Below the pieces are notes generated by a model. That model was not told the origin of the DNA, made no database searches, and saw nothing but the letters and a program-made list of their open reading frames with translations. 50,051 bases of DNA from Selaginella moellendorffii (taxonomy: Eukaryota > Plantae > Lycopodiophyta): the NCBI RefSeq assembly GCF_000143415.4, contig NW_003314263.1, forward strand, positions 4,413,008 to 4,463,058, written 5' to 3'. Positions 6,059 to 50,051 of this stretch are shown one piece after another (positions within the stretch are counted from its first letter, which is position 1; every line of letters begins with the position of its first letter). Made by a program: the position numbers and the translations under genes.

Positions 6059-6070
6059 TGATCCTTTTGT

Positions 6071-6341
6071 GTCTGGTGTGATTGCTAAATGTGTATGTAT
6101 ATTCCCCATATCCCAATGGGACTAATACAAAACCTGAGCATGTTGCCCTCTCAATGAGTTACTCTACGTGATCCTCTTGTGTCCAGCAAGATAACTGAAT
6201 GTGTATGTACATTCCCCATGTCCCAATGTGACTAATACAATGTAGAGTAGCTCATTGAGAGGGCAACATGCTCAGGTTTTGTATTAGTCCCATTGGGATA
6301 TGGGGAATATACATACACGTTCTGAGATCTCACTGAATTGC
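6071..6341. repeat. Stack of short LINE 3'-end fragments separated by decayed target-site copies
   Basis: 3'-end pieces at ~6086-6180 (-), ~6196-6240 (-) and ~6241-6322 (+). Spacers GTCTGGTGTGATTGC (6071-6085), GTCCAGCAAGATAAC (6181-6195) and GAGATCTCACTGAATTGC (6324-6341) resemble the 17-bp target or its reverse complement. Confidence 0.75.
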
Positions 6342-10221: not shown

Positions 10222-12651
10222 TTAATGAATCTCACCTTGAACCCGGGTTATGAATGCTCTTGCTGCATCTCTTGCATGGTCTGGCAAGGTGATGGTGGCA
10301 CTCTGCTTCTGCATCCAACCATGCACAACATTATCCACCGATATGCTCATGCTGGGATCCCTTGGATTCAGCACCCATCTCTTTTCTAGGCAATCCTTCG
10401 TATATCCGGAACTTGGCTTGAACCACTCCACAGTTACATTGAAGGAGTTAGTTTCCGCGTCCTCCTCTGCATCAGTGATGCAGCGCCCCACCCATATCAT
10501 TTGTTTTTTATTACTGGGTCTGACAAGCATGACCATTCCTTTGCAGACCTGTACTGGATTGAATGCTGAATCCGGCTTCTTGTTCCTCGGCCCACAATAG
10601 TGATCCTCAACATCGTTATCTGTCACTGCATTTCCAGAGGACATTGTTCCGCTACTATCTGGTGCTCTGGGTTCTGGCCAAAAGGACTCTTCCAATTCTT
10701 CATATACAACCGGCCCATTTTGGATAGCAGATATAATCTTCTCCCAATATTCGAGCAAAGGCTTGCACCTCTTAAAATAGGATTCTCCACCAAACACCAA
10801 CCCCCTCTTCCAGAAGGCAATATGCTGACTAATCCCGGCCACTATACTTTCCTGGTCTTTGAGTCCATCCGGGTGCATCGGCCGTGGGGAACCCTGAGGA
10901 ATCATAGGTTCCCCAGTTATGGGATCTCTCTTGAAGAGTTCAATGCCATCCACTGGCAGCCACACTGTGTCCCATTCTCTCATCTTGTACCTCATCACTG
11001 GAGCACCGTCACGCATGCTGAAATGAAACTGAAGAGGCTTGGAGTGGCCAATCAGCGTTTCGGATCCATCCCTGATGTAGCCTCTTACAAACCCCTTAAA
11101 GTCTGGAACCTCTGTCACAAGTGCAGCTTCAACAGTGCCTTTGATGCAATTTTGGAATTCATCGTAGAGTTGTGGGAGGGTGAGGACATTGGATCGCCGG
11201 AGGGACTCTGCCAGGTGACTGAACATGGCATCGACGTCTTCATGAGTGTGCCCAACCATGAGAAAGCCAAGTGTAACCGTTTCAAATATGCCTTTGGCAA
11301 CAAGCATCGCCTAGTACGCGAAGACGTACATGTTTTTGTTCTCACTGCCAGCATTGTCTGTTTGGAGCAGAAGATGGGGTGGAAGGCCACATCGGCCGCA
11401 AGAACTTCCTTGAGATTCTGCTTCGTTTGGATGAGGCTGTGCATTCACCGGGCGACCAGCCTCGTCGGAATGGCATGAGGCCTCACGTGATAACCCTACA
11501 ATCTGACGGCCAACATATTCACTGGGATGGCATGGGGCCCCACGCGATACTGCAAGCCTTTGCTCCTCCTCCAGCTGAACCCTGTATGGGGTTCGATCGA
11601 CAAGGGCCTTATGCAAGGGTTGGCCGTTCAGCTTAGTCTGCGCACTTTGCAGAGACCTTAAGTGTTTTGCTAGGGACGCAATCATCATGTTTGCACCCCC
11701 GCCACCCCATAGAGGTACAAAGAAGTTCCCATAGTTCTGGGCACCATGCCCATGAGCGATTATGCCAAACAGAGATACAGGCAGCTGCATGGATGAAGAG
11801 ATTGCCTTGGGAGCAGGATTGAGTTGAGGTAAGCACGTCTTTTTCTGGTCCATTTTGTCGTGGATGATGCAGAGGTAAGAGTCAGGTCTCTCCATGGAGA
11901 GAATCCTGTTATGATAATATGCAGTTCTGCAGCTTCTCTGCTTGATGTTGTGGTCGAGCCGCCTTCTAACCAATGTCTCTCGCTCTTGAGCGCTGCAAAA
12001 ATTCTTCGACAAAGCCATTTTGATAGCAGTGCACTCGTCACACTTTGAAAAGCTGGAGTACTTTCCTATACTCACATCCCTGAACCTGTTGCTCCACAAT
12101 CTATTAAATCTAGATTGGCTCAGCTTCCTGTAGCCATTACTCTGGAGTTCCCGATTCACATCTTCCAATATAGCCCCCTTGGTATACATGGAAGGGAGAA
12201 CTCGTTGGGTGTCTCGTGTTCCATCTTCCAAGAGGCGGGTTTTATGTGGTTGCTGCTCGCTACATGTCTCGACAAACCTCTTGAAGATTGCCTCTCCATA
12301 TACAACATGACCCCTGGTTTTGTGCGTACCGTCGTTCCCATGAACTGCCTGTTGAACCCTTTGTTCCTCAAACTCAGTTTTGATTCTGTAGAATGTGGTT
12401 CGAGGGATTCCATAAATGATTCTCCATGCCTTCATGCAGACCAAACCCCTCTGGAAGACCATGCCCCCCACCTGATGTTCTGAAGCATCAACAGATGACC
12501 GTAATGCCTCATACACAAAATTGCGAGCTGCCTTCCAGGACAATGTCTTGTATCTTGCTCTCTCCTCTTCAATAGCATCCCAATCAGCATGTTGACAGCA
12601 CCTCCTCTTGCAACAAGCAACTGTCGAGACCATTCGAACCTCCATCGCCAT
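10222..12651 (-). pseudogene. DDD/E transposase (Sola-like) interrupted by one in-frame TAG at 11311-11313
   Basis: ORFs 11311-12651 and 10222-11307 are in the same frame (..VFAY*AMLV..). Motifs FSKCDEC, IHDKMDQKK, LQTDNAGSENKN and FLMVGHTHEDVDAMF. The superfamily call rests on motif recall plus the 4-bp TSD. Confidence 0.72.
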
Positions 12652-21993: not shown

Positions 21994-23816
21994 TGTAAGG
22001 AACCAACTCGCTGAAGTGTCGTAGGCTAAAGGAACCCCAAAAGCATGACCAAAATGACAAAGAGTTCATCGGATGGGACCAAGTCGAAGATCGAGTTCAA
22101 GACCGACTCTAGGACCGAGTTCGAGATAGAGTCCGGAATCGAGTCCGAGACCAACTCGGGGACCGAGTTCAAGTCCGAGTTCGAGACCGAGTTCGAGACG
22201 GAGTCCGAGATCCGAAATCGGGTCCGAGACCGAGTCCGAGGTCGAGTCCGAGGTCGGGTCCGAGATCGGGTCCGAGATCGAGTCTGAGATCGAGTCCGAG
22301 ACCGAATCCGAAGTCGGATCCGAAATCGGGTCCAAGATCAAGCCAGAGACTAAGTCCAAATACTAATACGGGTCAAGGGGTGAAAGCCCAAAGCGTGCGT
22401 CTCCCAGGGGGGGGGGGCTGTGGGGGGTTCCAAAAGTATAGTAGGGATAGTGAAGTTTAGGAACTAGTCTTGAAGGAACTCTCCAGTGGTGCTTCCCAAC
22501 TGACTTGAGGTTGAGACTGGGGCCAAGGGGCCTTGGGTGGGAGTGAGCATGGGCTTGAGTGGTGCCGGAGGGGCCACCCAGGGAAGTGCTCAAGAGCAGC
22601 TCCCACTCCCGAAAAGGAAACCGACTGCGGTGCTCCCGGCTCATGTGGAGTGGTGCCCCACTTGAGTACCTTGTGGCTCATTGGTCCTCACCCTTCCTAG
22701 GGGCTTGGGCCTTCCCTTAGGAATGGAAGTGGGGGGGTAGAGGTACCCATACCGGGCCGCTAGGCCATGGTGTTTCGCCAACCTCAAGTCTTGGTGGAGA
22801 ACGATAGAGGCCAACGAAGGACCGGTGGCCACTTGGGAAATGATGAAGGCGAGGATCCGCGCAACTTACGTTCCTCCGAATGCTACTCTGCATCTAAGGG
22901 ACGAGCTGAGTAGGCTGAAGCAGACCGGAACCATTCAGGAGTATGTGAATGGGTTTATGGCAAAGAGGATACTTGTCATAGACATAGGGGATATGGATGC
23001 GTTCCATGCCTTCATATCAGGTTTGCAAACCTGGGCTCGTGGCGAAGTGATGCGGCGGAACCCGACCAACTACAAGGAAGCGTTGGATGCAGCTATCAAG
23101 GTGCATTTCAACGATAACCTGCAAAAGGGGAACACGACTGGGTCGGGATCCACGTTTAGCAAAGGGACCAAACCAAGGGGAACGTTTAGCAGAGGGAAAT
23201 TCAAGAAGAGTTTCTTTAAGAATGAGTCCTCGGGGTTCCGGAAAGGCAGATCCGGTGGCCAGCGAGCGAGTACGTGGGGGAGTCAAGCGAAAAGAGAAAA
23301 ACCCACGGATAAGAAGGTCAAGTCATATAGCAGCATGGAAAACAACGTATGCTACAACTGCGGTGAAGCGGGACACTTCTCGAGGGAATGTCCCTACCCG
23401 AAGAAGGCTAGAGCCAATATGGCCATCAAGTCGGGTGAAGTCCAAACTGAGGTATGTGATCCAGTCCCTAACTCAAAGTTACTCATTACACGAGCAACTT
23501 TGGTAGAGAGTCGTTTGCAACATCTACTAGCCCTCCAAGGGAAGCTCGGAGGTAGCTTTGTTAAGATCCTTATTGACACGGGTGCTTCGGATAATTTTGT
23601 GGTTGCAGACATAGTCCGGCAAGCCGGACTAACGGTGCAGCGGCTAGGCGAACCAAGGACTATAGAGTTTGTTCAAGGTAGCCAAAGCACCGATGAGGTA
23701 CTTCGACAAGCGAGAGTCGAAGTGGGGACTTGGAAGGTGGACATGGATTTCACTGTGTTAGACATGGCGGGATTTGACGTGATCTTCGGAATGGACTGGT
23801 TCAATCGATTCGTGGC
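21994..23816 (+). mobile_element. Truncated Ty3/Gypsy LTR retrotransposon (5' part) nested in LINE copy 2
   Basis: Starts TGTAAGG where LINE homology stops. Contains a gag-protease ORF and is cut off by return to LINE ORF1 sequence. Confidence 0.8.
22075..22360. repeat. 6/12-bp tandem microrepeat (GAGTCC/GAGATC/GAGACC)
   Basis: Directly visible; responsible for spurious low-complexity ORFs. Confidence 0.85.
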
Positions 23817-23835
23817 CGCTCCTGTACTTCTGTGA
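22825..23835 (+). CDS. Gag-aspartic protease (truncated)
   Basis: LSRLKQTGTIQEY (retrotransposon gag), CYNCGEAGHFSREC zinc knuckle, LIDTGASDNF protease site, DVIFGMDW. Confidence 0.9.
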   Translation: MATWEMMKARIRATYVPPNATLHLRDELSRLKQTGTIQEYVNGFMAKRILVIDIGDMDAFHAFISGLQTWARGEVMRRNPTNYKEALDAAIKVHFNDNLQKGNTTGSGSTFSKGTKPRGTFSRGKFKKSFFKNESSGFRKGRSGGQRASTWGSQAKREKPTDKKVKSYSSMENNVCYNCGEAGHFSRECPYPKKARANMAIKSGEVQTEVCDPVPNSKLLITRATLVESRLQHLLALQGKLGGSFVKILIDTGASDNFVVADIVRQAGLTVQRLGEPRTIEFVQGSQSTDEVLRQARVEVGTWKVDMDFTVLDMAGFDVIFGMDWFNRFVAAPVLL

Positions 23836-24558
23836 GACATCCATCCCTGTGAATCCCCTCAACGGCAAAAGTGCTTGGGATAATTCCCCGCAAGCCTTCC
23901 TGACTTGTAACTGGCCCGAGACCCTCACGAAGCTCCTGAACTCCAGCCAATGACCAAGCTAGTGGGTGAGGGGAGGTAGCTTCGTCCTCTCCACCACTCT
24001 CAGTGGGCACCTCGTCTCTGGCTTGGCTTTTACTTCCAGCTTGTTCCAGGACCTAGCCATCCCCCAGCTCTGAAACATCCACCACTTCTATCCCGTGGTT
24101 CTCGTCCTGCTAGGTTGCTTCCTTGCGTGGCTCGCTTGCTGCCTTGCACAGCAATGTTCTGGCCGTTGATACAGAGGGCCCTTTCCTGTCCTGGCTTGCT
24201 GCTGTACATGTGCCAGAACCCTGACCTTGTAACAGGCCTCCTCGTGGGAGTCGAATGCTGAGGCCCCTGCCTCACCCTCCACAACCTTGAGAGCTCAGTT
24301 TGATGGGCGTGGATGCTGTGATTCCCCTGTGGCTGTTCTCCATGCTGCTGACAGGGGAGTGAATACACAGCAGAAGCAAAAAAAGGGGAACAATACTTCC
24401 CTAAATCTCATGGCGGATGCCCCAGCCGACGGAGATTGCATGCTCTCCCCTGGGCACTCTTCTACCTTTGGCTGTGCCTCCGATCACGGCAGCCATGGTA
24501 CTGGGCGCCTTCCTCCACTTCCTCCCCAAAAAACGTCCAACATTAGGGTTTTTTTTTC

Positions 24559-24807
24559 GAGATCTCGCCGGATTGCAGCACCGTGGGGTGTCTTTGACCC
24601 TAAACGCCTAAATGCACCTAAACCCTAAACCCTTTAAACCCTAAAATTTAAACCCTGAACCTACTTAACAACTTAGGGAATGGTTCTTCAATCTGGATAT
24701 ACTCACCATATATATCTACACATTGCTTTAGGGTTTAGGGTTTTGGTTTTATAGTTTTAAGGTTTAGGGTTTACCAGTATAGGGTTTAGTGTTTAGGATT
24801 TAGGCGT
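24559..24807. repeat. Internal inverted partial copy of the telomeric unit plus divergent degenerate telomere tracts
   Basis: 24559-~24625 is the reverse complement of 47159-47222, followed by CCCTAAA variants to ~24660, a ~65-bp spacer, and TTTAGGG variants ending TTTAGGCGT. Confidence 0.88.
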
Positions 24808-24820
24808 GATCCTCTTGTGT

Positions 24821-27130
24821 GGCTTCGGCAAGAGCAAATGTAGACAATCTATGCTATCTCCAACTTGCCTCGAGTCAGTGTAGAGCCTCACCACTGGGGG
24901 CTGTGAGCTAGATCGGGGCCTCACACTTAAGGACCAAGCTGGTGAAGATGGGAGTGAAGCTCTAGGCTTGTTTGTAAGGTCTGACAAGCATCTATGGGCA
25001 AACTTTAGTGTCTGGAGTGGTTGTTCCTTGCTCAGCCCTAGGGCCATGACTTAATGGTCAATGTCCCTGGAGATCTCCTAGCTTGGTTATGACCCTGAGC
25101 AAGGGATTATGGACTCACCTTCCAGTGAGGCCTTCATGTTGATCCCACAGGACAAAAGTGCGTCCATGCTAGGGCCCTGTTCCTTTCTATTCTTGGTTGT
25201 TCTGGGTGGCATAGACTTAAGTTCTCCTGTCTCACACCCTAGCTCTACTGCTGCTGCACGTGCTGCTGCTCTAGTGGTGACTCCTGACGTGACCCTAGTG
25301 TGCCGCTCCTGTGCTTCTGTGAGACATCCATCCCTGCGAATCCCCTCAACTACAAAAGTGCTTGCAATGATTCCCTGTTAGGATTCTATCCCTTACACCC
25401 TAAGCCAACTGGCTAAAGGGGTGATCACTTGATTGTAGGGCCCTTTCCTTATCCTATTATCCTGACCTAGTGCCTAACAATCCTCCCCTCGTCAAGGAAT
25501 GATCGTCCGCAATCATACTTAGGCCACCATCCGGTCACCATGGTCCTTCTCTTAGGGTCTACCAAACCTTGGTTCTCCCTCTAGATCCACCATGTTGAAT
25601 ATTCCTTCAGAATATTCCTGCCCCACTTGTCAGCCACGAGAATCGAACTGGGCTCCAATACCAATGTTATGATCCGGCGCAAAAAGACAGAGATCTAGTC
25701 ACCCTAGACTATACTACGCCACCTCTTGAGGTTCCTCACCACCCAACCACCCCCGAACTACCTCAAAAGCTCCTCAAACTCATCCATGGTAGACACTGGT
25801 GGTTTCTTATCCGCAACATGGGACTCCTCAAGCCAATTCCACCATCGAAGACCCGCATCACGCAAAACCATCGGAATAGCCACTAAAGCCTCTGCATCTG
25901 GAGTTCCTCTAGTAGCCAAGAACTTCTTCACATTGGCTAGCCAAGCGAGACACTCATCCACACCACCATCACCGGAAAAAGTTGGAATCTTGAGTCGATC
26001 TACCAAAGAAGGCTTACTTGGAGCGCTACTCCGTCCAGCCTCGAGTGCCTCGACACACCCACGCATGGTATCCATCATGCCATGCATCTCGTCTTGCATC
26101 TCTTGCTGATTTTTATTAAGGGCTCGCAGCTCATGAACCACATCTTGAATGGTCCAAATTTCTGCAGCTTCGTCGGCACCATCGTCGGCACCACCATCGA
26201 CAATAGGATTCCAGCGTTCAACTTGGTCGGCCATCGCAACCAATGCTCCTAGACTATGCTACACCACCTCTTGAGGTTCCTCACCACCCAACCACCCCCG
26301 AGCTACCTCAAAAGCTCCACTGCGCCGCCGCTCCACTGTGAGCCCTAGGGTAGGTTAAGTCCCCTACCCTAACATGCCTTAATATACCCTTGAGCCTCCC
26401 TTTGACCGATGTTGACCATGTAGTCAAAGCTGGTGCCTAACATTCCCCACAAGCCTTTCTGACTTGTGACTAGCCTGAGACTCTCACAAAGCTCCTATAC
26501 TCCAGCTAGTGACCAGGCAAGTGGGTGAGGAAAGGTAGCTTCGTCCTCTCCTCCACTCTCAGTGGAAACTTCGCTTTTGGTGTGGCTTATACTTCCAGCT
26601 TTTTCCAAGACTTGGCCATCCCCCAACCTAGAAACATCCACCACTTCTATCCCATTGTTTTCATCCTGCTGAGCTGCTGCTTTGCGTGGCTCACTTGCTG
26701 TCTTGTGCAGTAGTGTTCTGGCATTGATACAGAGGCCCCTTTCCCATCCTGGCTTACTGCCGTGTGTGTTCTAGGACCCCGACCTTGTAGCAATCCTCCT
26801 CGTGGGAGCCAAATGCTGAGGCCCCTACCTCGCACTCTATGACTGTGAAAGTTCAGATTGATGGGTGTGGATGCCGTGACTCTATTGCGGCTGTTCTCCA
26901 TGCTTCTGACAAGAGAGTGAGTACACAGCAAAAGCAAAAAAAGGGAAATGATGCTTCCCTGAATCTCACGACAAATGCCCCCACCGACAGTAGCAAGTGT
27001 GGGGAGATTGCATGCTCTCCCCTGTGCGCTCTTCTACCTCTAGTTGCACCTCCTATCACGACAGCCATGGTACTAGGTGCCTTCCACCACTGCCTCCTCA
27101 AAAACTGTCCAATATTAGGGTTTTTTTACC
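24821..27130 (-). mobile_element. LINE copy 3: 5' end/ORF1 fragment, interrupted by an LTR-type insertion
   Basis: 24821-25375 and 26448-27130 match ~45745-46970; decayed. Confidence 0.88.
25376..26442 (-). mobile_element. Small non-autonomous LTR-retroelement derivative (TRIM-like) with a gag fragment
   Basis: Termini TGTTAGG..CCTAACA; 5-bp TSD TTCCC (25371-25375, 26443-26447). tRNA-iMet-like PBS TGGTATTGGAGCC (25651-25663,-), PPT GAGGGGAGGA (25481-25490,-), gag-like LKIPTFSGDG..WL..WW (25758-26243). Confidence 0.8.
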
Positions 27131-27147
27131 CAATCTGGCAAGATCAC

Positions 27148-27525
27148 TGAACGTGTATGTACACCCCCCATATCCCAATGGGACTAATACAAAAATTGGG
27201 TGTGCCACCCTCTCAATGAGCTACTCTACATGATCCTCTTGTGTTGCAGCTGAACCTAGTCCTGGAGTAGAAGTGGATGTGGTCGTCTGAATCAAATCGT
27301 ATCGATATCCAAGTCTCCCCCACGAGCTAAACGTAGAACAAAGTCTAGGGGGCACCACTGCCAGTGAATCTCGCCACCTACCATTCTGCCGAAGCAGGGG
27401 AGCCACCAGGACCTCCACTCCTTGAGTTGCCTCGGTTTTTCCTGCTCTTTCAGGATGGTGTAATGAAAACACACTACTGCAAGAGTGAGTCTCCACCATG
27501 ATGCCACCACCACCGATATCCTCAG
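27148..27525 (-). mobile_element. LINE copy 4: 3'-end fragment in tandem with copy 3
   Basis: Matches 39436-~39810. Separated from the copy 3 5' end only by CAATCTGGCAAGATCAC (27131-27147). Confidence 0.9.
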
Positions 27526-39282: not shown

Positions 39283-39371
39283 AAACCCTAAACCCTAAAC
39301 CGATATCTGACGTGTTTAGGGTTTAGGGTTTAGGGTTTAGGGTTTTAGGGTTTAGGGTTTAGGGTTTAGGG
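39283..39371. repeat. Interstitial telomeric tract with inverted start
   Basis: AAACCCTAAACCCTAAAC, 13-nt spacer CGATATCTGACGT, then about 8 TTTAGGG units. Confidence 0.92.
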
Positions 39372-39543
39372 TTTAGGCGCGTTTAGGCGTTTAGGGTCAA
39401 AGGCACCCCGTGGTGCTGCAATCCGGCGAGATCGCTGAACGTGTATGTACATTCCCCATGTCCCAATGGGACTAATACAAAAAATTGGCGTGCCGCCCTC
39501 TCAATGAGCTACTCTACGTGATCCTCATATGCCGCAGCTAGAC

Positions 39544-42500
39544 CTAGTCCTGGAGTAGAAGTGGACGTGGTCGTCTCGAGCGAATCATGTCGATGTCCAA
39601 GTCTCCCCCATGAGCTGATCTTAGAACAGAGTCTGGGGGGCGCCACTGCCAGCGAATCTCGCCACCTCCCAATTTGCCGAAGCATGGGAGCCACCTAGAT
39701 CTCCGCTCCTCGAGCTGCCTCGGTTTCGCCTGCTCTTTCAGGATGGTGTAGTGAAGACGCACCGCTGCAAGAGTGAGTCTCCACCATGATACCACCACTG
39801 CCGATATTCTCGCTTGCTACCCATCAAAGCGACAGTGGTTCCGTGCCTCCCAAAGTGCCTGCAGTCCTGTTGCCCTCCAAATGGACCAGCGCTCATGGCC
39901 CAACGCCTCCCAGATGGACATCCCAACTTCAGCCCCTGTCACGTCCCACCGGACTCGCATGTTCCATCGGTGCCGTCCGTAGCAGCGGATACGCCTCCAA
40001 GCTGGACCAATGGCTGGGCCTCTAGCTCCCTCAAACCAGTGGAGGATATCCCCACTCCGAGCCTCAAACTCTGGAATGTCGCCGAGTTCCTGCGTCGCCT
40101 TGAAGATCTGTCGCCAAACTTCTCTTGCCACGTCACATTCCCATAGGACATGTCGCGTTGTCTCCAGCTCGCCACACTCCTTACACCGTCGGCATGCTTC
40201 TTCCTGGAACCGCTGTCCTACCGGCAGCCCGTTATTTGCCACCAACCAAGAGGTGGCCTTGACTTTCTCCTGTACCGGTAGTTTCCAGAACGCAAGCGTG
40301 TTGCCCACCACCTGATTAGCTTCAACTCCTTGCTCGATCCATTTCTTCCAGAGCTTGGGGATCTCCCCTCGGGCCTCCTCCCTGCCGGTCAAGAGACCAT
40401 CCCTTGCTTCCTTGACGCCGAAGGAGAAGAAGCTTCTCGCTCCTCGTTTCCATGCTGCGGGGTCCCAATCTAGATCCTCGATGAGCTGCTGTCGCCACCA
40501 TCTAAGAATGCCTTCCCCCTCTAGTGCTGCCAACGATTGAACCACCACCGACTGCTTCGGAGCCTGTCGTATTACTCGAATCCTACCCTTGACCTCGTCA
40601 TCCGTCACCATCGGCATGACCTGTTCGTCCCCTGCTGGCAACAGCATGTCGCCTCTCAAGACTCGAAAAGGACGCCCAACATTTTGGTCTGGAGACACAA
40701 CGAACCATACCTCCACATCCCTGTCCTCCCAAGCTGGTGTTGGGGCCGTAAACGCCCGTGTCCAGGCCCCCAAGCTAACTCGTTCCCTATCTGGCTCCAC
40801 GTCCCGTTGCAGAGCCACAAAGTCTCCAGATTTGAGACAACGCCTAGGCCAGAGCTGCCCCTGCTTCGCCTCACTCACAGCTCTGATAATGCGAAGAAGA
40901 TCAAGGTGGACTTTCCTCCACCGTCCCGGGTTAAAGACCTGCATATGCCTCGTAGTCTTCCTCCTGTCCTTGTCCAGAACCCGCACCAGTTGCTTGAGAG
41001 TTCGGAAGCCTGCGCTATGTAGCTTTCTCCAGATTGTGTAGTGGTCCTCCCTGCCCAGCGTCCTGTCATCCAGTTTGAAGAGGTCGTTGAAGAACAGGGG
41101 CTGGTTCAGCCAGTCCTCCGCTCGCCCTAGCAATTCCCTGCTGACTGGAAACGCGCTCCATAACCGGAGAAACCCCTGGACTAGAGTGCCGCCCTTGACT
41201 ACTTGTTTCGGCCCCTCGGCAAAGAGCCAACGTGGATCTTCTTCCCACGGTCTTGCAGTGTTGTGCTTGGGCCGGATTGCCAACAAGTTCTGCCTAAACA
41301 TGAGTCTCCAAGGTTGATTACCTGGTTGAAGGCCCATGAGGAGGATTTTGTACCGTAGCGCCTTCGCCATGTTGCTTGGATCGATTACTCCAAGTCCTCC
41401 CAAGACTCGCGGACATGCTGTAGATTGCCACGCGACCTTGGCCATGCTCCTCCCTGTGACCAGAGCGCCCCGCCACAAATACTGACGGACCATCGTGCGT
41501 ACCTTTCTAAGAGTGCGTTCTGGAACAGGCCAGATGGAGAGGTGGTACCAGATGCCGGGCAGAATGATGCTCCTAGCGACCACCACTCTCGCTGGCAAGC
41601 CGAGTTTCCGGGGAGCCCACTTCTGGATTGACGTTCGTACCCGTCGGAGCAAGGTGTCATCCTGAAGTGCTGCACTGAACCGAGTACCAACCTGGATCCC
41701 CAGGTACCTAGCGTCTTCTCCTGGTTTGAGCCACTGGAAGCCGATGTCCTGCCCCCAAGATTCAATGCCTGGTCGCCCCCAATTTATGCCCACTGATTTG
41801 TTCCAGTTAATTGCTGCACCAGCCGCGAGGTTGAACGTCTCCAATGCCTTCTTAGCTGCATCCATGTTCTCCTTAGTCGCAAGTAGGAACAAGGCAGTGT
41901 CGTCCGCAAAAGCACCATCAAGGAGTTCCCGAGACACCCTTGTGGTTCCCGGAAGTTGCTGTCTCGCAGCTGGCAGTGTGAGTCCTTTAATGCGTCCGCC
42001 TTCCGCTAGAAACGTGCCCAGGGCCTCAGCCACAATCAGAAAAAGATAGGGTGCTAGTGGACACCCTTGGCGTACTGAACGTCCCAGCTGGAAACTCGGT
42101 CCCGTCTCTCCATTGATTGTGACTCTGCTTGCGGCTCCTCGGTACAGTAACGAAATCCTAGCGACCATCTCTCTCGGGATGCCGATCGTGTTCATGCACT
42201 CCTCTAGGAACCTCCAGTCCACCCGATCGTAGGCCTTCTCGAAGTCCAATAGCCATGCTGCAGTTTGTTGGTTAGAGATCTCTGCCCATCTCTGAGCCAG
42301 CAGGTACGTCCAGATGTTTTCTGCGATTTGCCGCCCTGGAACAAACCCTGTCTGCTGCTCCCGGATGATCAGCGGCATGACAGCTTGGAGCTTGAGGGTC
42401 ATTGCTTTGGCATAGACCTTGTAGGACGTGTTGAGCATGGTGATTGGCCTCCAATTCTTCAGCTCCTGCAGGTCCCCCCTCTTTGGAATAAGCGCAATCT

Positions 42501-43383
42501 GGCCCTCAAGGATCTCACGGGGCAAGGTCCCATCACGTTGAGCATCCCACCATGCTTGTAGCAGCAGCGGGCCTATGGTCTCCCAGTGCTCCTCGAAGAA
42601 AATGGGCAAGAGGCCATCGATACCTGGCTGCTTGTCATTGCTGAGCTTCCTGAGCGCTTCCCGAAGCTCCTCCAGTGTGAAGTCCGTCTTCAGTGAGTCG
42701 TGCCACTCATGCCGTATGCGAGATGAGGCGTAAATCCGGTCCAGTCTCGACTGGGAGGATACTGTCTGTCGCCTTGTAAAAGGGTGAGTGTGAGGTGCGA
42801 ATCCCGCAGCATGCTGAAGGTCCATGAGCCCCAGTATGTCCATGAGCTGACTCCATTGCTTCTGTTCACGTGGCTGAATTGTTACCTGCATACCCCTGCG
42901 ATCACAGACGTCCTCGACCATGTTGAAATCTCCCAGGACCAGCCATTCATCTGCTTGCCCCTGGGCAGACTGTAGCACACTCAGCCAGAATTCTGCACGT
43001 CTCCCTTTCTTCGTTGGTGCATAGACGTTGATTATCCCCACCCGTCCAAAGTGGAGGTGAAGGACAAGCAATTGAGCCTTTCCTGGGACGAGGACAAGGT
43101 GGTTTCGTACCTGAGCAGACCATTTGGTTGAGACTACCACTGCTGTGCCCCCTCCTGGTCTGGCCACTGCTTGCGTGGCCGGGTTCCACCAGAGCCGTCC
43201 CCTCATTCCAAAGGTGTAGTCTGGGGCCACAGTCATTTTGTGCTCTTGCAAGCATAGGATGTCGATATCTCCTTCTAAGCTGATCTCCCGGATGTGGGAC
43301 TTGAGCTGCGCCCTTTTGTTGAGTCAACTGCCGGTCCAGCTGAGTCCCCGGCAGTTCCAGGTGACGAGCGTGAGGGTTGTCAT
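39544..43383 (-). pseudogene. LINE ORF2: APE endonuclease - reverse transcriptase - zf-RVT, with two premature stops and an internal deletion
   Basis: ATG at 43383; TWNCRG, LCLQE, NVYAP, GDFN, SRLDR; WRPITMLN, DFEKAYD, RQGCPLAP, FADD; CRRC..H..W.C. TGA at 43324-43326 and TAG at 39817-39819 (a Gln codon in copy 2). Confidence 0.93.
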
Positions 43384-46300
43384 GGAGCCACGTACTTCCA
43401 AGAAAGTGAGGAGTTACGGGGTCTCGCCCTCCATTCTGTGGAGATGGTCCACACCGCAGTCATCTTCCCCCTGTGCTTCGTCCAGGAGAAGCCACGGACA
43501 GTGTACTTCGCAAAGCCCGTCCACTCAGTGATAGCACTCTCCATGCGTGTGTGGTAGTCTCCAATAGTGACGACCTCTGGGAAGGCTGTGATCCCGCGGC
43601 ACATCAGCCAGTCTCCCGCCTCTGTGGGACTTAATTCCCGCTTAGGGGGAATCCACCTGACCGCCATTCCTACTGTTCGAGGGAGGACCGGCTGGAAGCC
43701 ATCTCCTTCGACATCCGTAATAGGTCCCTCGAACAGTTTGGGCTGTGAGGATGAGCCCAAGAGTGGTGGGGCGACCGGGAAGCGAATGTGGGGAGCTTGG
43801 TCCGAAGGGCGTGCCTTCAAGATCCGCTCCTGCTCTGCAGGTAGCTCAAACGGCTTCTGGGATGCCAACCTGTTCCGCTTGACTGAGCAGGCCTCCTCCC
43901 GGTGTCCAGCACGCTGACAAAAGTTGCATCTAGGTTCTGAGTTCTCCGTTTGGATCCTGATATACTGGCCTAGCACTGCGATCTCTGTCGGGATTTCCGC
44001 CGGGGCTGACACGAAAACTTTGAGGCGGATGGGACCTAGAACACCCTCTGCTTCTACAGTGTCGAGGCCGGCCGCTATCTGGCCGATACTTCCTTCAACC
44101 AGCTCCTGTATCACCAATGTGATCCGCATTTCCATGGGAACGTCCCACAATGCAATGTTCACTGGAAAGCTCCCGCCCTTGAGACGAGCCTGGTCCTCTG
44201 CGGTGAACCTTGGGATCCATGGGTGGAATGACACCGCCCAATTCTCGTCAATGAGGCCATGCATGGCCTCCGCCTGAGACCGTGCCTCCTCTGTCTCAAA
44301 GACGACTGTGTAGCAGCCCTTTCCATGTGGCAGCATCATCTTCATGAGGATTCCCTGGCCTAGCGTTGCATTGATCCAATCGTTAGCCATGCGACCTGTT
44401 GGAAACTTCCCTCTGAAAACAGCGATCAGGGCCTTCTTGCGGAGTTCCTCTTCCTTCTCTGCTACTGCTCTTTGCAGAGTCTCAGCCAGCTTGACAGGGA
44501 CTGCCTTTCCTCTTGTGTCGTCGTGGATCAAGTCACTTCCGCCTTCCCCTGCTGCTGCCACCTTGTGGACTTCGGCCTGACCAGGTGTTCCCCAGTTCAC
44601 GTTATGTGAGGTGTGCTCCTTGTTAACATCACTGTTCCCGTCCGAGGAGTGCAGCGCTTCCACCACCTTTCTGCAGCCCCGAGTCTTCCTCACTCTCGAT
44701 TGGGCTTTTGCCACTTGCTCCGGGGTGTCAACCTCCTGGTTCTGGTGCACCCGAGACTCTGTCCTCTTGTCTGGCAGAGCGTGCTCCTCCTCGAGAAAGG
44801 CTTCAACTGTGTTTGTCCAGGCCGGGTCCTCCTTGGCAAGTCTCAGAGTTTTAAGCTTCCGCCGCGTTGCTCGCTTCACTTTCTTCTTCTCACGTTTGGT
44901 CTTCCTCTTGTTGAAGGCATCACGGTCCTGGAACTGAAGTGTGCCATCTGACTGTTCCTCCAGTGAGCGCTCCGTCTCTGGCTCCGTTTCTGGCTCTTCG
45001 AGTCCCTCTTCAACTGTTGGTGTTGGCATGGTATCCAACTTGCCACCTTGCTCTTGCGCCCATGCATCAAAGAGATCCGCTTGCTGTGTGACCACTGCCT
45101 TCGTGATTAACTCTTGAGCTTGACGCAGTGCAGGTCCCAACACGAGGTCCTCCCCCAAAGGGTTCAGGTCCAGCTCTCTGATTGTGCACATCAATGTTGA
45201 CTGGAGTTCTTTGCGTACTGGAAGCGGAGAACTTTGGATCCTTTCCTCAAAGTGGCGAGGGTCCCAGACCAGCATCCCTGCCTTGTCGAGTCGTGGGAAT
45301 GGAGAGGGAAGCGACTCCTTCTGCTCCTCATGTGGTGTTGTGGGAGAGTCCGGATCTGATTTCCTCACTTGTTGCAAGTGCGCAGGGTCCACCTGGTGTG
45401 TTTCCTCCTGTACTCTCGCATGTACTGGATCAGGGATGAGCCCAGCCACGTCTGCAAGAGTTTCAGGGTGGGACGAGGGGTTCCCACCAGCTGGGCATGA
45501 ACTTGATGCATTCCCATAAGCAGGGAGTGTGCCAGCTGCCCAGTCCTTCCGAGTCCTGAGGTTCTCTGTTAGAATTGCGAGAGCTGCACGACGTGCATCC
45601 CACAGAGAGATGTTCTCCACGTCTACCCCATCCTCTAGTTGGTGAGTTAGCTGCGAGACTTCTTGCTGGATTCGCTGTGCCGACTCTCGACACACCTGTT
45701 CCGTGAACTGCTCACTGTTCCAAAAGACTATACCACCGCTTGCAGGCTTCGGCAAGACCAAGTGTAGACAATCTGTGCTATCTCCACCCTGTCTCAAGTC
45801 CGTGCAGCGCCTCGTCACTGGGGGCTGTGGGCTGGATCGGGGCCTCACACTTGAGGAACGAGCTGGTGAGGCTGGGAGTGAAGCTCTGGGCTTGTTTGTC
45901 AGGTCCGACAAGCATCTGTGGGCAAACTTCAGTGTCCGAAGCGGCAGCTCCTTGTTCAGTCCTAGGACCACGGCTGAACGATCTGGCTCTCTGGAGATCT
46001 CTTGGCTTGGTTGTGCCTCTGAATGGGGGATTGTGAACTCACCTTCTAGTGAGGCTTCCATGTTGAGCCTGCAGGACAGAAGTGCACCGTCCTGTTTCCC
46101 TCTGTTTTTGGACGTTCTGGGTGGGGCAGACTTGAGTTCTCCTGTCCCACGTCCTGGCTTTGCTGCTGCTGCACGTGCTGCTGCTCTAGTGGTGACGCCT
46201 GCCCTGACCCTGGTGTGGCGCTCCTGTACTTCTGTGAGACATCCATCCCTGTGAGTCCCCTCGACGGCGAAAGTGCTTGGGATAATTCCCCGCAAGCCTT

Positions 46301-46781
46301 CCTGACTTGTAACTGGCCCGAGACCCTCACGAAGCTCCTGAACTCCAGCCAATGACCAAGCAAGTGGGTGAGGGGAGGTAGCTTCGTCCTCTCCACCACT
46401 CTCAATGGGCACCTCGTCTCTGGCTTGGCTTTTGCTTCCAGCTTGTTCCAGGACCTGGCCATCCCCCAGCCCTGAAACATCCACCACTTCTATCCCGTGG
46501 TTCTCATCTTGCTGGGTTGCTTCCTTGCGTGGCTTGCTTGCTGCCTTGCACAGCAATGTTCTGGCCGTTGATACAGAGGGCCCTTTCCTGTCCTGGCTTG
46601 CTGCTATACGTGTGCCAGAACCCCGACCTTGTAACAGGCCTCCTCGCGGGAGTCGAATGCTGAGGCCCCTACCTCGCCCTCCACGACCTTGAGAGCTCAG
46701 TTTGATGGGCGTGGATGCTGTGATTCCCCTGCGGCTGTTCTCCATGCTGCTGACAGGGGAGTGAGTACACAGCAGAAGCAA
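43380..46781 (-). CDS. LINE ORF1 (long disordered N-terminus, RRM-like region, CCHC knuckle)
   Basis: Open for 1133 codons; CNFCQRAGHREEAC; its stop overlaps the ORF2 start (ATGA). First in-frame ATG is at 46745. Confidence 0.85.
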   Translation of the reverse strand: MLLLCTHSPVSSMENSRRGITASTPIKLSSQGRGGRGRGLSIRLPRGGLLQGRGSGTRIAASQDRKGPSVSTARTLLCKAASKPRKEATQQDENHGIEVVDVSGLGDGQVLEQAGSKSQARDEVPIESGGEDEATSPHPLAWSLAGVQELREGLGPVTSQEGLRGIIPSTFAVEGTHRDGCLTEVQERHTRVRAGVTTRAAARAAAAKPGRGTGELKSAPPRTSKNRGKQDGALLSCRLNMEASLEGEFTIPHSEAQPSQEISREPDRSAVVLGLNKELPLRTLKFAHRCLSDLTNKPRASLPASPARSSSVRPRSSPQPPVTRRCTDLRQGGDSTDCLHLVLPKPASGGIVFWNSEQFTEQVCRESAQRIQQEVSQLTHQLEDGVDVENISLWDARRAALAILTENLRTRKDWAAGTLPAYGNASSSCPAGGNPSSHPETLADVAGLIPDPVHARVQEETHQVDPAHLQQVRKSDPDSPTTPHEEQKESLPSPFPRLDKAGMLVWDPRHFEERIQSSPLPVRKELQSTLMCTIRELDLNPLGEDLVLGPALRQAQELITKAVVTQQADLFDAWAQEQGGKLDTMPTPTVEEGLEEPETEPETERSLEEQSDGTLQFQDRDAFNKRKTKREKKKVKRATRRKLKTLRLAKEDPAWTNTVEAFLEEEHALPDKRTESRVHQNQEVDTPEQVAKAQSRVRKTRGCRKVVEALHSSDGNSDVNKEHTSHNVNWGTPGQAEVHKVAAAGEGGSDLIHDDTRGKAVPVKLAETLQRAVAEKEEELRKKALIAVFRGKFPTGRMANDWINATLGQGILMKMMLPHGKGCYTVVFETEEARSQAEAMHGLIDENWAVSFHPWIPRFTAEDQARLKGGSFPVNIALWDVPMEMRITLVIQELVEGSIGQIAAGLDTVEAEGVLGPIRLKVFVSAPAEIPTEIAVLGQYIRIQTENSEPRCNFCQRAGHREEACSVKRNRLASQKPFELPAEQERILKARPSDQAPHIRFPVAPPLLGSSSQPKLFEGPITDVEGDGFQPVLPRTVGMAVRWIPPKRELSPTEAGDWLMCRGITAFPEVVTIGDYHTRMESAITEWTGFAKYTVRGFSWTKHRGKMTAVWTISTEWRARPRNSSLSWKYVAP

Positions 46782-47342
46782 AAAAGGGGAACAATACTTC
46801 CCTGAATCTCACGGCGGATGCCCCCGCCGACGGTAGCAAGTGTGGGGAGATTGCACGCTCTCCCCTAAGCGCTCTTCTACCTCTGGCTGCGCCTCCGATC
46901 ACGGCAGCCATGGTATTGGGCGCTTTCCTCCACGTCCTCCCCAAAAAACGTCCAACATTAGGGTTTTTTGCGCGCGCGCACACAATATACAATCCGGCGA
47001 GATCGCGGCGCCACTTTGTGCAATCCACATTCTCCGTGTGCTGTTGTCGAGACGGCGTGATCGAGAGCAAGGAGAGGAGGCAAGAGAATGAATTTTCATT
47101 CATTCGCGAGCGAGGGAGACGACAAGAGACAACCCGGTTTAGGGTTTAGGGTTTAGGGTTTAGGCGCGTTTAGGCGTTTAGGGTCAAAGACACCCCGCGG
47201 TGTTGCAATCCGGCGAGATCGCGGCACCACTTTGCGCAATCCACATTCTCCATGTGCCGTTGTCGAAACGGCGTGATCGAGAGCAAGTAGAGGAGGCAAG
47301 AGAATGAATTTTCATTCATTCGCGAGCGAGGGAGAAGACAAG

Positions 47343-47400
47343 AGACAACCCGAGACCGGTTTCGTCCTTTTTGGGACTCATCAGCCGGGTGTAGTCGTCT
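47343..47400 (-). ncRNA. Type I hammerhead ribozyme (minimal, palindromic stem III)
   Basis: RNA ACCCGG-CUGAUGA-GUCC CAAAAA GGAC-GAAA-CCGG-UC^UCGGGU: full catalytic core, 6-bp stem I, 4-bp stem II, GUC cleavage triplet (cut between 47354 and 47353). Confidence 0.92.
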
Positions 47401-47434
47401 AACGTCTACCCTAACCCTAGCTCGGCGCCGGCTC

Positions 47435-47462
47435 TACTTATATTCTGGCTCTGTCACGTGGC
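47435..47462 (-). promoter_or_regulatory. Candidate promoter of the telomeric unit (G-box + TATA)
   Basis: GCCACGTGAC (47453-47462) and TATAAGTA (47435-47442) lie upstream of the ribozyme on the same strand; motif evidence only. Confidence 0.35.
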
Positions 47463-47539
47463 GCGAGTCCGAGTGGCAGCCATGCGAAGTGCATGGCGGC
47501 GTTGGCTCGCGAGTATGCGAACGTAGCACAGCTGGTGTT

Positions 47540-50046
47540 GGGTTTAGGGTTTAGGGTTTAGGGTTTAGGGTTTTAGGGTTTAGGGTTTAGGGTTTAGGGT
47601 TTAGGCGCGTTTAGGCGTTTAGGGTCAAAGACACCCCGCAGTGCTGCAATCCGGCGAGATCGCGGCTTTAGGGTTTAGGGTTTACCGGTTTAGGGTTTAG
47701 GGTTTAGGGTTTACGGGTTTAGGGTTTAGGGTTTAGGGTTTAGGGTTTAGGGGTTTAGGGTTTAGGGTTTAGGGTTTAGGGTTTAGGGTTTAGGGTTTCC
47801 GGTTTAGGGTTTAGGGTTTAGGGTTTAGGGTTTAGGGTTTAGGGTTTAGGGTTTAGGGTTTAGGGTTTAGGGTTTAGGGTTTTAGGGTTTAGGGTTTAGG
47901 GTTTAGGGTTTAGGGTTTAGGGTTTAGGGTTTAGGGTTTAGGGTTTAGGGTATAGGGTTTAGGGTTATAGGGTTTAGGGTTTTAGGGTTTAGGGTTTAGG
48001 GTTTAGGGTTTAGGGTTTAGGGTTTTAGGGTTTAGGGTTTAGGGTTTAGGGTTTAGGGTTTAGGGTTTAGGTTTTAGGGTTTAGGGTTTAGGGGTTAAGG
48101 GTTTAGGGTTTAGGGTTTAGGGTTTAGGGTTTAGGGTTTAGGGTTTAGGGTTTAGGGTTTAAAGACACCCCGCAGTGCTGCAATCCGGCGAGATCGCGGC
48201 TTTAGGGTTTAGGGTTTCCCGGTTTAGGGTTTAGGGTTTAGGGTTTACGGGTTTAGGGTTTAGGGTTTAGGGTTTAGGGTTTAGGGGTTTAGGGTTTAGG
48301 GTTTAGGGTTTAGGGTTTAGGGTTTAGGGTTTCCGGTTTAGGGTTTAGGGTTTAGGGTTTAGGGTTTAGGGTTTAGGGTTTAGGGTTTAGGGTTTAGGGT
48401 TTAGGGTTTAGGGTTTTAGGGTTTAGGGTTTAGGGTTTAGGGTTTAGGGTTTAGGGTTTAGGGTATAGGGTATAGGGTATAGGGTTTAGGGTATAGGGTT
48501 TAGGGTTTTAGGGTTTAGGGTTTTAGGGTTTAGGGTTTAGGGTTTAGGGTTTAGGGTCTAGGGTTTTAGGGTTTAGGGTTTAGGGTTTAGGGTTTAGGGT
48601 TTAGGGTTTAGGTTTTAGGGTTTAGGGTTTAGGGGTTTAGGGTTTAGGGTTTAGGGTTTAGGGTTTAGGGTTTAGGGTTTAGGGTTTAGGGTTTAGGGTT
48701 TAGGGTTTGGGGGTTTAGGTTTAAGGGTTTAGGGTTTAGGGTTTAGGGTTTAGGGTTTAGGGTTTAGGGTTTAGGGTTTAGGGTTTAGGGTTTAGGGTTT
48801 AGGGTTTAGGGTTTAGGGTTTAGGGTTTAGGGTTTAGGGTTTAGGGTTTAGGGTTTAGGGTTTAGGGTTTAGGGTTTAGGGTTTAGGGTTTAGGGTTTAG
48901 GGTTTAGGGTTTAGGGTTTAGGGTTTAGGGTTTAGGGTTTAGGGTTTAGGGTTTAGGGTTTAGGGTTTAGGGTTTAGGGTTTCAGGGTTTAGGGTTTAGG
49001 GTTTAGGGTTTAGGGTTTCAGGGTTTAGGGTTTAGGGTTTAGGGTTTAGGGTTTAGGGTTTAGGGTTTAGGGTTTAGGGTTTAGGGTTTAGGGTTTAGGG
49101 TTTAGGGTTTAGGGTTTAGGGTTTAGGGTTTAGGGTTTAGGGTTTAGGGTTTAGGGTTTAGGGTTTAGGGTTTAGGGTTTAGGGTTTAGGGTTTAGGGTT
49201 TAGGGTTTAGGGTTTAGGGTTTAGGGTTTAGGTTTAGGGTTTAGGGTTTAGGGTTTAGGGTTTAGGGTTTAGGGTTTAGGGTTTAGGGTTTAGGGTTTAG
49301 GGTTTAGGGTTTAGGGTTTAGGGTTTAGGGTTTAGGGTTTAGGGTTTAGGGTTTAGGGTTTAGGGTTTAGGGTTTAGGGTTTAGGGTTTAGGGTTTAGGG
49401 TTTAGGGTTTAGGGCCTAGGGTTTAGGGTTTAGGGTTTAGGGTTTTAGGGTTTAGGGTTTAGGGTTTAGGGTTTAGGGTTTAGGGTTTAGGGTTTAGGGT
49501 TTAGGGTTTAGGGTTTAGGGTTTAGGGTTTAGGTTTAGGGTTTAGGGTTTAGGGTTTAGGGTTTAGGGTTTAGGGTTTAGGGTTTAGGGTTTAGGGTTTA
49601 GGGTTTAGGGTTTAGGGTTTAGGGTTTAGGGTTTAGGGTTTAGGGTTTAGGGTTTAGGGTTTAGGTTTAGGGTTTAGGGTTTAGGGTTTAGGGTTTAGGG
49701 TTTAGGGTTTAGGGTTTAGGGTTTAGGGTTTAGGGTTTAGGGTTTAGGGTTTAGGGTTTAGGGTTTAGGGTTTAGGGTTTAGGGTTTAGGGTTTAGGGTT
49801 TAGGGTTTAGGGTTTAGGGGGGGGGGTTTAGGGTTTAGGGTTTAGGGTTTAGGGTTTAGGGTTTAGGGTTTAGGGTTTAGGGTTTAGGGTTTAGGGTTTA
49901 GGGTTTAGGGTTTAGGGTTTAGGGTTTAGGGTTTAGGGTTTAGGGTTTAGGGTTTAGGGTTTAGGGTTTAGGGTTTAGGGTTTAGGGTTTAGGGTTTAGG
50001 GTTTAGGGTTTAGGCCTTAGGGTTTAGGGTTTAGGGTTTAGGGTTT
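47540..50046 (+). repeat. Telomere (TTTAGGG)n, variant-rich proximally
   Basis: About 2.5 kb of TTTAGGG running to the end of the sequence. Confidence 0.99.
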
Positions 50047-50051
50047 AACAT

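What the first reader, a model, noticed from the sequence alone, without database searches (positions are those of the whole stretch)
47159..47539. Hammerhead-ribozyme RNA unit built into the telomere: a candidate non-autonomous terminal retroelement
Seen: the minus strand reads G-box/TATA, then a complete hammerhead (ACCCGG CUGAUGA GUCC-CAAAAA-GGAC GAAA CCGG UC^UCGGGU), then ~195 nt ending GACCCUAAACGCCUAAACGCGCCUAAACCCUAAA. Copies share this 3' end, are variably 5'-truncated and are capped by TTTAGGG. Known: minimal type I hammerheads with a palindromic stem III occur in Penelope-like elements and retrozymes, and endonuclease-less Penelope-like elements attach to chromosome ends through C-strand telomeric repeats at the RNA 3' end. 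Inference: this small ORF-less RNA self-cleaves, anneals to the G-overhang and is copied onto the end by an RT encoded elsewhere.
Basis: partly seen in the sequence, partly recalled or inferred. Interest (0 to 1): 0.95.

Follow-up and report, generated by a model that had tools for sequence, protein, structure and literature searches.

The report
Hammerhead module of telomeric Penelope-like retroelement
A real self-cleaving hammerhead RNA motif sits in a short retro-copied module at a chromosome end of the spikemoss Selaginella moellendorffii, but it is most likely the tail end of the telomere-attaching Penelope-like elements already published for this species, not a new independent small element.

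Summary
Rfam finds one type I hammerhead at 47390-47348 (minus strand), 40.5 bits against a cutoff of 34. It is followed by 195 nt ending in imperfect C-strand telomere repeats, and the module lies inside the TTTAGGG telomere of scaffold GL377567.1 of S. moellendorffii.

Three independent copies share the 3' tail and point it towards the centromere. One starts within 1 nt of the predicted cleavage site and is capped directly by telomere repeats.

- The 381-nt "unit" has no 5' boundary of its own. Contigs from four public runs show diverged copies that continue into the same non-telomeric sequence upstream of 47541 and downstream of the tail.
- The copy carries its own putative TATA, so its template RNA began further upstream.
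- The adjacent 7.6-kb element is an L1-type LINE inserted into copy 2 with a 17-bp duplication. An independent LINE copy elsewhere ends without the telomeric tail, so the LINE is not the partner.
- Endonuclease-less Penelope-like elements at telomeres, with type I hammerheads in their terminal repeats, are already published for this species.
- I could not reach the Penelope reverse transcriptase or any RNA data.

Earlier notes of this scan report the same kind of module on other pieces of this genome.

The parts
47546..50051 (+). Terminal (TTTAGGG)n telomere tract at the scaffold and chromosome end, holding the short copies T1 and T2.
   Evidence: L002 shows the window is the end of GL377567.1.
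48128..48200 (-). T2: a 5'-truncated tail-only copy starting GCCGCGATC. Its imperfect repeats are replaced by perfect ones.
   Evidence: It lies in a duplicated ~534-bp block.
47591..47666 (-). T1: a 5'-truncated tail-only copy with the same start as T2. T1 and T2 are one event, later duplicated.
47159..47541 (-). Copy 1: the 5'-truncated module, made of an upstream region, the hammerhead, the body and the imperfect C-strand tail. Three CCCTAAA repeats follow at 47158-47138.
   Evidence: Other genomic copies continue beyond both ends.
47437..47460 (-). CACGTG and TATAAG motifs 52-70 nt upstream of the ribozyme, a putative promoter.
   Evidence: Read from the sequence. Function not tested.
47348..47390 (-). 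Type I hammerhead ribozyme. Cleavage is predicted between 47354 and 47353. An extended stem I spans 47402-47335.
   Evidence: Rfam RF00163, 40.5 bits. HH9 alignment. Dimer fold. No variant in 7 contig pieces.
47206..47222 (-). The 17-nt site GCGATCTCGCCGGATTG in the 3' hairpin region of the module, uninterrupted here. This is the LINE's insertion site.
46990..47136 (-). Copy 2, 5' part. It starts at CGGGTTG, 1 nt from the cleavage site, is capped directly by telomere repeats, and ends at the 17-nt site.
   Evidence: 95.2% identity to copy 1.
39436..46989 (-). L1-type LINE inserted into copy 2, including 20 extra nt at its 5' junction. ORF1 is 46745-43380. ORF2 is 43251-39817 and carries APE, RVT_1 and zf-RVT domains.
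   Evidence: The 17-bp duplication is at 46990-47006 and 39419-39435.
39315..39435 (-). Copy 2, 3' part: the second copy of the 17-bp duplication, the rest of the hairpin, the imperfect tail and about eight CCCTAAA repeats of the older telomere.
24558..24645 (+). Interstitial tail copy in the inverted orientation, abutting the 5' end of a second, nested LINE copy.

Best explanation
The segment is the 3'-terminal hammerhead and telomere-tail module of a telomere-attaching retroelement family of Selaginella moellendorffii. That family is most likely the published endonuclease-less Penelope-like (Coprina-type) elements, whose terminal repeats carry type I hammerheads.

Proposed mechanism:
- An RNA carrying imperfect C-strand repeats (CCUAAACGCCUAAACGCGCCUAAACCCUAAA) pairs with the G-rich overhang.
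- The overhang's 3' OH primes reverse transcription by an element-encoded RT.
- The cDNA stops either where the enzyme falls off (copy 1, T1/T2) or at the RNA's 5' end made by hammerhead self-cleavage (copy 2).
- Telomerase then re-caps the end with TTTAGGG.

Because the tail lies about 165-195 nt downstream of the cleavage site, any hammerhead-processed RNA primed at the tail yields a ~195-nt stub. The short copies are therefore expected by-products of the longer element rather than a separate replicating small element.

Shown: the motif, the architecture, the orientation, the ends, and the existence of longer copies. Inferred: cleavage in vivo, the priming mechanism, and the identity of the RT. 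An L1-type LINE later inserted into copy 2.
For: - The hammerhead passes the Rfam cutoff.
- The window is a true scaffold end of S. moellendorffii with 2.5 kb of TTTAGGG repeats.
- Three independent copies share the tail and its orientation.
- Copy 2 begins 1 nt from the cleavage site. The chance of that is roughly 3 in 390 for a random truncation point within the module.
- Contigs of at least two diverged copies per side continue into the same non-telomeric sequence, both upstream of 47541 and downstream of 47151, and a second organism label shows a diverged homologue of the upstream extension.
- The hammerhead shows no variant across 7 contig pieces, while the pieces carry 37 variants in the 1288 nt laid, all outside the hammerhead. 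If sites were independent, P is about 1e-3.
- Literature: telomeric EN-deficient PLEs occur in this species, with type I hammerheads in their pLTRs that resemble the Schistosoma and human ones (PMC4209133). C-strand repeats plus a hammerhead at the 3' end are the attachment device of Athena and Coprina elements (PMC8557442, PMC6431247). Repbase holds Coprina Sm1 and Sm2 (PMC13159263).
Against: - No Penelope-type RT lies in this 50-kb window, and I could not fetch one from the genome. The link to the PLE therefore rests on the literature and on unchecked notes of this scan.
- No run on record is RNA and all runs were contigs, so transcription, RNA ends and cleavage are untested.
- The longer form seen in contigs could itself be a longer non-coding element.
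- The published paper calls the Selaginella helix III 'typical', whereas here it is a 2-bp palindromic stub. I could not compare the sequences directly.
Confidence: 0.65

Rival explanations
1. One reading: a distinct non-autonomous small retroelement, like a telomeric retrozyme. A short ORF-less hammerhead RNA with its own promoter replicates as a lineage and is copied onto chromosome ends in trans by a Penelope-type RT.
For: - Copy 2 has no ORF, so whichever RT copied it acted on an ORF-less template.
- Putative G-box and TATA motifs sit 52 nt upstream of the ribozyme.
- Animal non-LTR retrozymes are proposed non-autonomous derivatives of PLE pLTRs (PMC7229834; bioRxiv 10.64898/2026.07.22.740005).
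- Unchecked notes mention a ~355-bp unit and a 1.2-unit tandem on other pieces of this genome.
Against: - Copy 1 is truncated relative to longer copies, and the tail is internal in other copies.
- The window holds only one hammerhead and no tandem units.
- Cleaved copies lose both promoter and ribozyme.
- Copy 1 includes its own TATA, so its template began upstream of it.
Confidence: 0.2
2. The module is a partner or internal-deletion derivative of the adjacent LINE. The two share a 3' tail, and the LINE's RT mobilises the unit in a SINE/LINE-style relationship.
For: - The sequence GCGATCTCGCCGGATTG plus the tail follows the LINE at 39435-39363 and also occurs in the unit.
- An earlier follow-up note read it as a shared tail.
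Against: - An independent LINE copy (L001, 97.5% identity) sits in a gypsy-like gene with its own 15-bp duplication CGAACTATATCTGTT and ends at ...ACGTTCAG with no tail.
- In the window the 17 nt flank the LINE on both sides as a target-site duplication, and copy 1 carries the site uninterrupted.
Confidence: 0.03
3. The module is a subtelomeric repeat that spread by recombination or break-induced replication, and the hammerhead is an inert relic. There was no RNA-mediated addition.
For: - A ~534-bp telomeric block carrying T1/T2 was clearly duplicated at the DNA level.
- Head-to-head telomere repeats at 39283-39338 and 24600-24790 show rearrangement.
Against: - The copies have a common 3' end that grades into telomere repeats, and different 5' ends each capped directly by telomere repeats.
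- One 5' end lies at the ribozyme cleavage site, and orientation is uniform.
- The hammerhead is invariant among diverged copies.
Confidence: 0.07

Closest known systems
Coprina-type endonuclease-deficient Penelope-like elements of Selaginella moellendorffii (Gladyshev & Arkhipova 2007; hammerheads in Cervera & de la Pena 2014, PMC4209133; Repbase Sm1/Sm2 named in PMC13159263)
   Same: Same species and the same assembly. Both lie at chromosome ends, carry a type I hammerhead resembling the Schistosoma and human ones, have C-strand telomere repeats at the 3' side, and have 5' ends capped by telomere repeats.
   Different: No RT is present in this window, and direct sequence identity to Sm1/Sm2 could not be tested. 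Helix III here is a 2-bp palindromic stub, whereas the paper describes a typical helix III.
Athena elements and Terminons of bdelloid rotifers (PMC6431247, PMC8557442)
   Same: The hammerhead lies upstream of short reverse-complement telomere repeats at the 3' end. Both form head-to-tail chains interleaved with telomere repeats, with 5' truncation by telomere repeats.
   Different: In rotifers the repeats lie immediately downstream of the hammerhead. Here about 165 nt of structured body separates them. The host is a plant with TTTAGGG repeats.
Animal non-LTR retrozymes (PMC7229834; bioRxiv 10.64898/2026.07.22.740005)
   Same: Small ORF-less sequences with a type I hammerhead that has a weak or palindromic helix III and is thought to act as a dimer. 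They are related to PLE pLTRs and proposed to use the PLE RT in trans.
   Different: Retrozymes are tandem arrays with one hammerhead per unit and give circular RNAs. This window has one hammerhead, no tandem units and no RNA evidence. Telomere attachment is not a retrozyme feature.
Drosophila HeT-A/TART/TAHRE telomeric non-LTR elements (PMC5537684)
   Same: Head-to-tail retro-additions at chromosome ends with 3' ends facing the centromere and variable 5' truncation.
   Different: They have no ribozyme and no telomerase repeats, and they are LINE-class elements with poly(A) tails.
HDV-like ribozymes at the 5' ends of R2 and other non-LTR elements (cited in PMC4209133)
   Same: A self-cleaving ribozyme defines the 5' end of a retroelement RNA.
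   Different: A different ribozyme class, which stays on the downstream product. The type I hammerhead here is lost from the downstream product.

Membership tests
Hammerhead ribozyme type I (Rfam RF00163) | Score at or above the curated gathering threshold of the covariance model | tested here: met
   40.5 bits against 34, E 6e-7, full-length match to model positions 1-45.
Hammerhead ribozyme type I (Rfam RF00163) | Conserved core CUGANGA / GAAA / cleavage triplet NUH, with stems I and II | tested here: met
   CUGAUGA, GAAA and GUC are present, with stem I of 6 bp and stem II of 4 bp.
Hammerhead ribozyme type I (Rfam RF00163) | A helix III able to form | tested here: inconclusive
   As a monomer it has only 2 bp with a 2-nt loop. 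The palindrome ACCGGU gives 6 bp in a double hammerhead, at -31.1 against -22.2 kcal/mol. The window holds only one hammerhead copy.
Hammerhead ribozyme type I (Rfam RF00163) | Self-cleavage activity | not testable with these tools
   The only indirect evidence is copy 2 starting 1 nt from the predicted site.
Endonuclease-deficient Penelope-like elements (Coprina/Athena) | PLE-clade reverse transcriptase without a GIY-YIG endonuclease | tested here: inconclusive
   None in the 50-kb window. The rest of the genome could not be searched. The only RT present belongs to an APE-type LINE.
Endonuclease-deficient Penelope-like elements (Coprina/Athena) | Location at chromosome ends, 3' end towards the centromere, units separated by telomere repeats | tested here: met
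Endonuclease-deficient Penelope-like elements (Coprina/Athena) | Short reverse-complement telomere repeats at the 3' end, downstream of a hammerhead | tested here: met
   The hammerhead at 47390-47348 is followed by the tail at 47185-47159. The spacing is about 165 nt, not adjacent.
Endonuclease-deficient Penelope-like elements (Coprina/Athena) | The module is a pseudo-LTR flanking the ORF | tested here: inconclusive
   Contigs show the module internal to longer sequence on both sides, but only 30 nt of each extension were visible.
Non-LTR retrozymes | Tandem head-to-tail units, each with a type I hammerhead | tested here: not met
   There is one hammerhead in the window, and copy 2 lacks it.
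Non-LTR retrozymes | Unit-length circular RNA | not testable with these tools
   No RNA run is on record.
SINE-like partner of the adjacent LINE | A 3' end shared with the LINE's own 3' end | tested here: not met
   The LINE copy in L001 ends ...ACGTTCAG followed by its own duplication, with no tail.

The most novel reading that the evidence does not exclude
The module is the working part of a self-sustaining, ORF-less telomeric retrozyme in a plant. Chains such as copy 1 followed by copy 2 would be transcribed from the module's own promoter and processed by double hammerheads into ~200-400-nt linear or circular RNAs. A Penelope-type RT would copy these onto G-overhangs in trans, so a non-coding ribozyme RNA would contribute to building chromosome ends alongside telomerase.
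Probability: 0.2. Interest if true: 0.65.

Novelty: already known. Interest (0 to 1): 0.35.

Why it matters
Telomere-attaching Penelope-like elements are the closest retroelement relatives of telomerase. How their RNAs are processed and docked on chromosome ends is still inferred mostly from sequence. This locus is a clean example of the published Selaginella case.

One detail is worth keeping: a copy whose 5' end sits within 1 nt of the predicted hammerhead cleavage site and is capped by telomerase repeats. If that recurs at other ends, as unchecked notes of this scan suggest, it would be a genomic footprint of in vivo self-cleavage in the PLE life cycle. The 2014 paper said such in vivo evidence was lacking.

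The claim of a new small non-autonomous element is not established here.

Tried and rejected
1. LINE as the mobilising partner or parent of the unit. Rejected: L001 shows the LINE's 3' end lacks the tail, and the 17 nt are a target-site duplication.
2. Using the LINE as a handle to reach other copies of the module or the PLE. ORF1 and ORF2 homologue searches gave only L001, L002 (which is this window) and L003. None carried another module or either extension 30-mer.
3. RNA evidence. No holder run is on record as RNA and all runs are contigs. No starts, ends or joints were reported. Contig ends at 47366 and 47401 coincide with k-mer branch points at variant sites, so they are not RNA ends.
4. 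Stem covariation. This could not be tested, because the hammerhead is invariant in all pieces. Differences between copies in the body and hairpin are non-compensatory transitions.
5. Searching the window for the two extension 30-mers. Both are absent.
6. Earlier findings looked up by sequence. The result was blank.
7. Gladyshev & Arkhipova 2007 and Arkhipova et al. 2017 are not held in the library, and the 2014 paper's supplements are not held. The published hammerhead sequence could therefore not be compared letter by letter.
8. Scan for a PLE RT among the window's long ORFs. None was found.

Full report
**What is there**

Read on the minus strand from the window's end, about 2.5 kb of CCCTAAA repeats lead into a chain of related pieces. 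A search of the whole window against Rfam gives a single hit at gathering threshold. It is a type I hammerhead at 47390-47348 on the minus strand, at 40.5 bits against a cutoff of 34, E 6e-7. A permissive scan also aligns 47402-47335, with an extended stem I, to the human/Schistosoma-like HH9 model at 42 bits, below its cutoff of 52.

The catalytic core is intact, and cleavage is predicted after GUC, between 47354 and 47353. The downstream RNA would be 195 nt, ending in imperfect C-strand repeats and followed by three perfect CCCTAAA units. Helix III is only ACCGGU, which cannot close as a monomer. Written as a double hammerhead, the fold evaluates at -31.1 kcal/mol, against -22.2 for two canonical monomers.

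**Organism and place**

LINE ORF1 is 100% identical to SELMODRAFT_404777 of Selaginella moellendorffii. The locus fetched for that protein is this window, at the end of scaffold GL377567.1 of GCA_000143415.2. This is a real assembled chromosome end.

**Copies of the module** (BLAST and alignment)

| Copy | Coordinates | Features |
|---|---|---|
| Copy 1 | 47541-47159 | Upstream region, hammerhead, body and tail |
| Copy 2 | 47136-46990, continuing at 39435-39372 after a 7.6-kb insertion | Begins at CGGGTTG, 1 nt from the cleavage site, directly after telomere repeats |
| T1 and T2 | 47666-47591 and 48200-48128 | About 75-nt tail-only copies with the same start |
| Interstitial copy | 24558-24645 | Inverted orientation |

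T1 and T2 lie in a ~534-bp telomeric block that is duplicated at 96.7% identity and shares marker variant repeats, so they represent one event. That leaves three independent telomere-embedded additions. All have the tail towards the centromere, and each has a different 5' end capped by telomere repeats. This is the geometry expected when the G-overhang primes reverse transcription of an RNA carrying C-strand repeats and telomerase then re-caps the end.

**The neighbouring 7.6-kb element is a LINE inserted into the module, not its partner**

ORF2 (43251-39817) has APE endonuclease, RVT_1 and zf-RVT domains. ORF1 has no Pfam match. The 17 nt GCGATCTCGCCGGATTG flank the LINE on both sides, and copy 1 carries the same 17 nt uninterrupted.

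The decisive test is L001. This independent LINE copy, 97.5% identical, lies in a gypsy-like gene on another scaffold. It has its own 15-bp duplication, CGAACTATATCTGTT, and its 3' end is ...ACGTTCAG with no telomeric tail. The tail therefore belongs to the hammerhead module. This contradicts one earlier follow-up note that the LINE shares the tail and agrees with another that the LINE inserts near the tail of telomeric Penelope-like elements.

**The 381-nt 'unit' is not a complete element**

I laid contigs from four public runs on 46500-47560.
- Pieces with different internal variants all continue upstream of 47541 into the same non-telomeric sequence, for at least 165-195 nt. A second organism label shows a diverged homologue of that extension.
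- Pieces also continue beyond the tail at 47151 into another shared sequence, for at least 151-335 nt.
- Neither extension occurs in this window or in the fetched loci.

Copy 1 is therefore a 5'-truncated piece of a longer element, and in some copies the tail is internal. Copy 1 also contains the putative TATA that would drive it, so its template RNA must have started further upstream. Tandem or pLTR-bearing Penelope-like elements allow exactly this.

Because the tail lies about 165-195 nt downstream of the cleavage site, any hammerhead-processed RNA primed at the tail gives a ~195-nt stub like copy 2. That stub has lost both promoter and ribozyme.

**Conservation**

Across the seven contig pieces, 37 variant positions fall in the 1288 nt laid, and none falls in the hammerhead. 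If sites were independent, P would be about 1e-3. They are not fully independent. No covariation can be scored, because the motif does not vary.

**What is known**

- Cervera and de la Pena 2014 found type I hammerheads in their pLTRs and compared them with the Schistosoma and human motifs.
- Reviews describe C-strand repeats next to a hammerhead as the docking device of Athena and Coprina elements.
- Repbase lists Coprina Sm1 and Sm2.
- Non-autonomous hammerhead derivatives of PLE pLTRs are proposed for animals.

**Limits**

- No Penelope-type RT lies in the window, and I could not fetch one from elsewhere in the genome.
- No run is on record as RNA, and contigs cannot show RNA ends.
- The two key papers and the 2014 supplements are not held.
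- The identification with the published PLE family therefore rests on species, location, architecture and motif type, not on a direct alignment.

**Verdict**

The most likely reading (0.65) is the terminal hammerhead and tail module of the known telomeric Penelope-like elements, present here as truncated and ribozyme-cleaved retro-copies that were later hit by a LINE. A separate replicating small element remains possible (0.2). The most useful new detail is the copy whose 5' end marks the cleavage site.

Noticed in passing
L001:9905-9950 and window 27126-27150: The LINE copy in L001 carries, ahead of its 5' end, the last 12 nt of a LINE 3' end plus the 16-nt module site. Its template RNA therefore began inside an upstream LINE of a tandem LINE-site-LINE array like the one at 27131 in the window. 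This hints at promoter activity in the LINE 3' end, or at read-through transcription.
   Followed up: partly
window 47566-48700: A ~534-bp block of telomere repeats is tandemly duplicated at 96.7% identity. It carries marker variant repeats (CCGGAAA, CCCGTAAA, CCGGTAAA/CCGGGAAA, CCCTATA) and the short tail copy. This is DNA-level duplication inside a telomere.
   Followed up: yes
window 39283-39338 and 24600-24790: Both interior tail copies are followed by C-strand repeats and then, after a short spacer, by G-strand repeats. These head-to-head telomere repeats suggest old end-fusion or fold-back events.
   Followed up: no
window 6057-6341: Tail-to-tail inverted LINE 3' ends form a near-palindrome around CAATTCAGTGAGATCTC, with extra short repeats of the LINE 3' UTR.
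   Followed up: no
window 24554-6337: A second LINE copy (93-94% identity to the first) appears split by about 14 kb of nested insertions, including a Ty3/gypsy gag-protease fragment (22825-23835). Its 5' end abuts the module's 17-nt site in the opposite orientation.
   Followed up: partly
window 10222-12651 (minus strand): Two adjacent ORFs match DUF7869 (E 2e-26 and 1e-7), inside the region another note calls a ParB-like transposon.
   Followed up: no
window 46970-46989: Twenty extra nucleotides, TATATTGTGTGCGCGCGCGC, lie between the target site and the LINE 5' end. L001 has CGTGCGTG at the same junction, so the LINE 5' junction carries variable GC/GT-rich filler.
   Followed up: no
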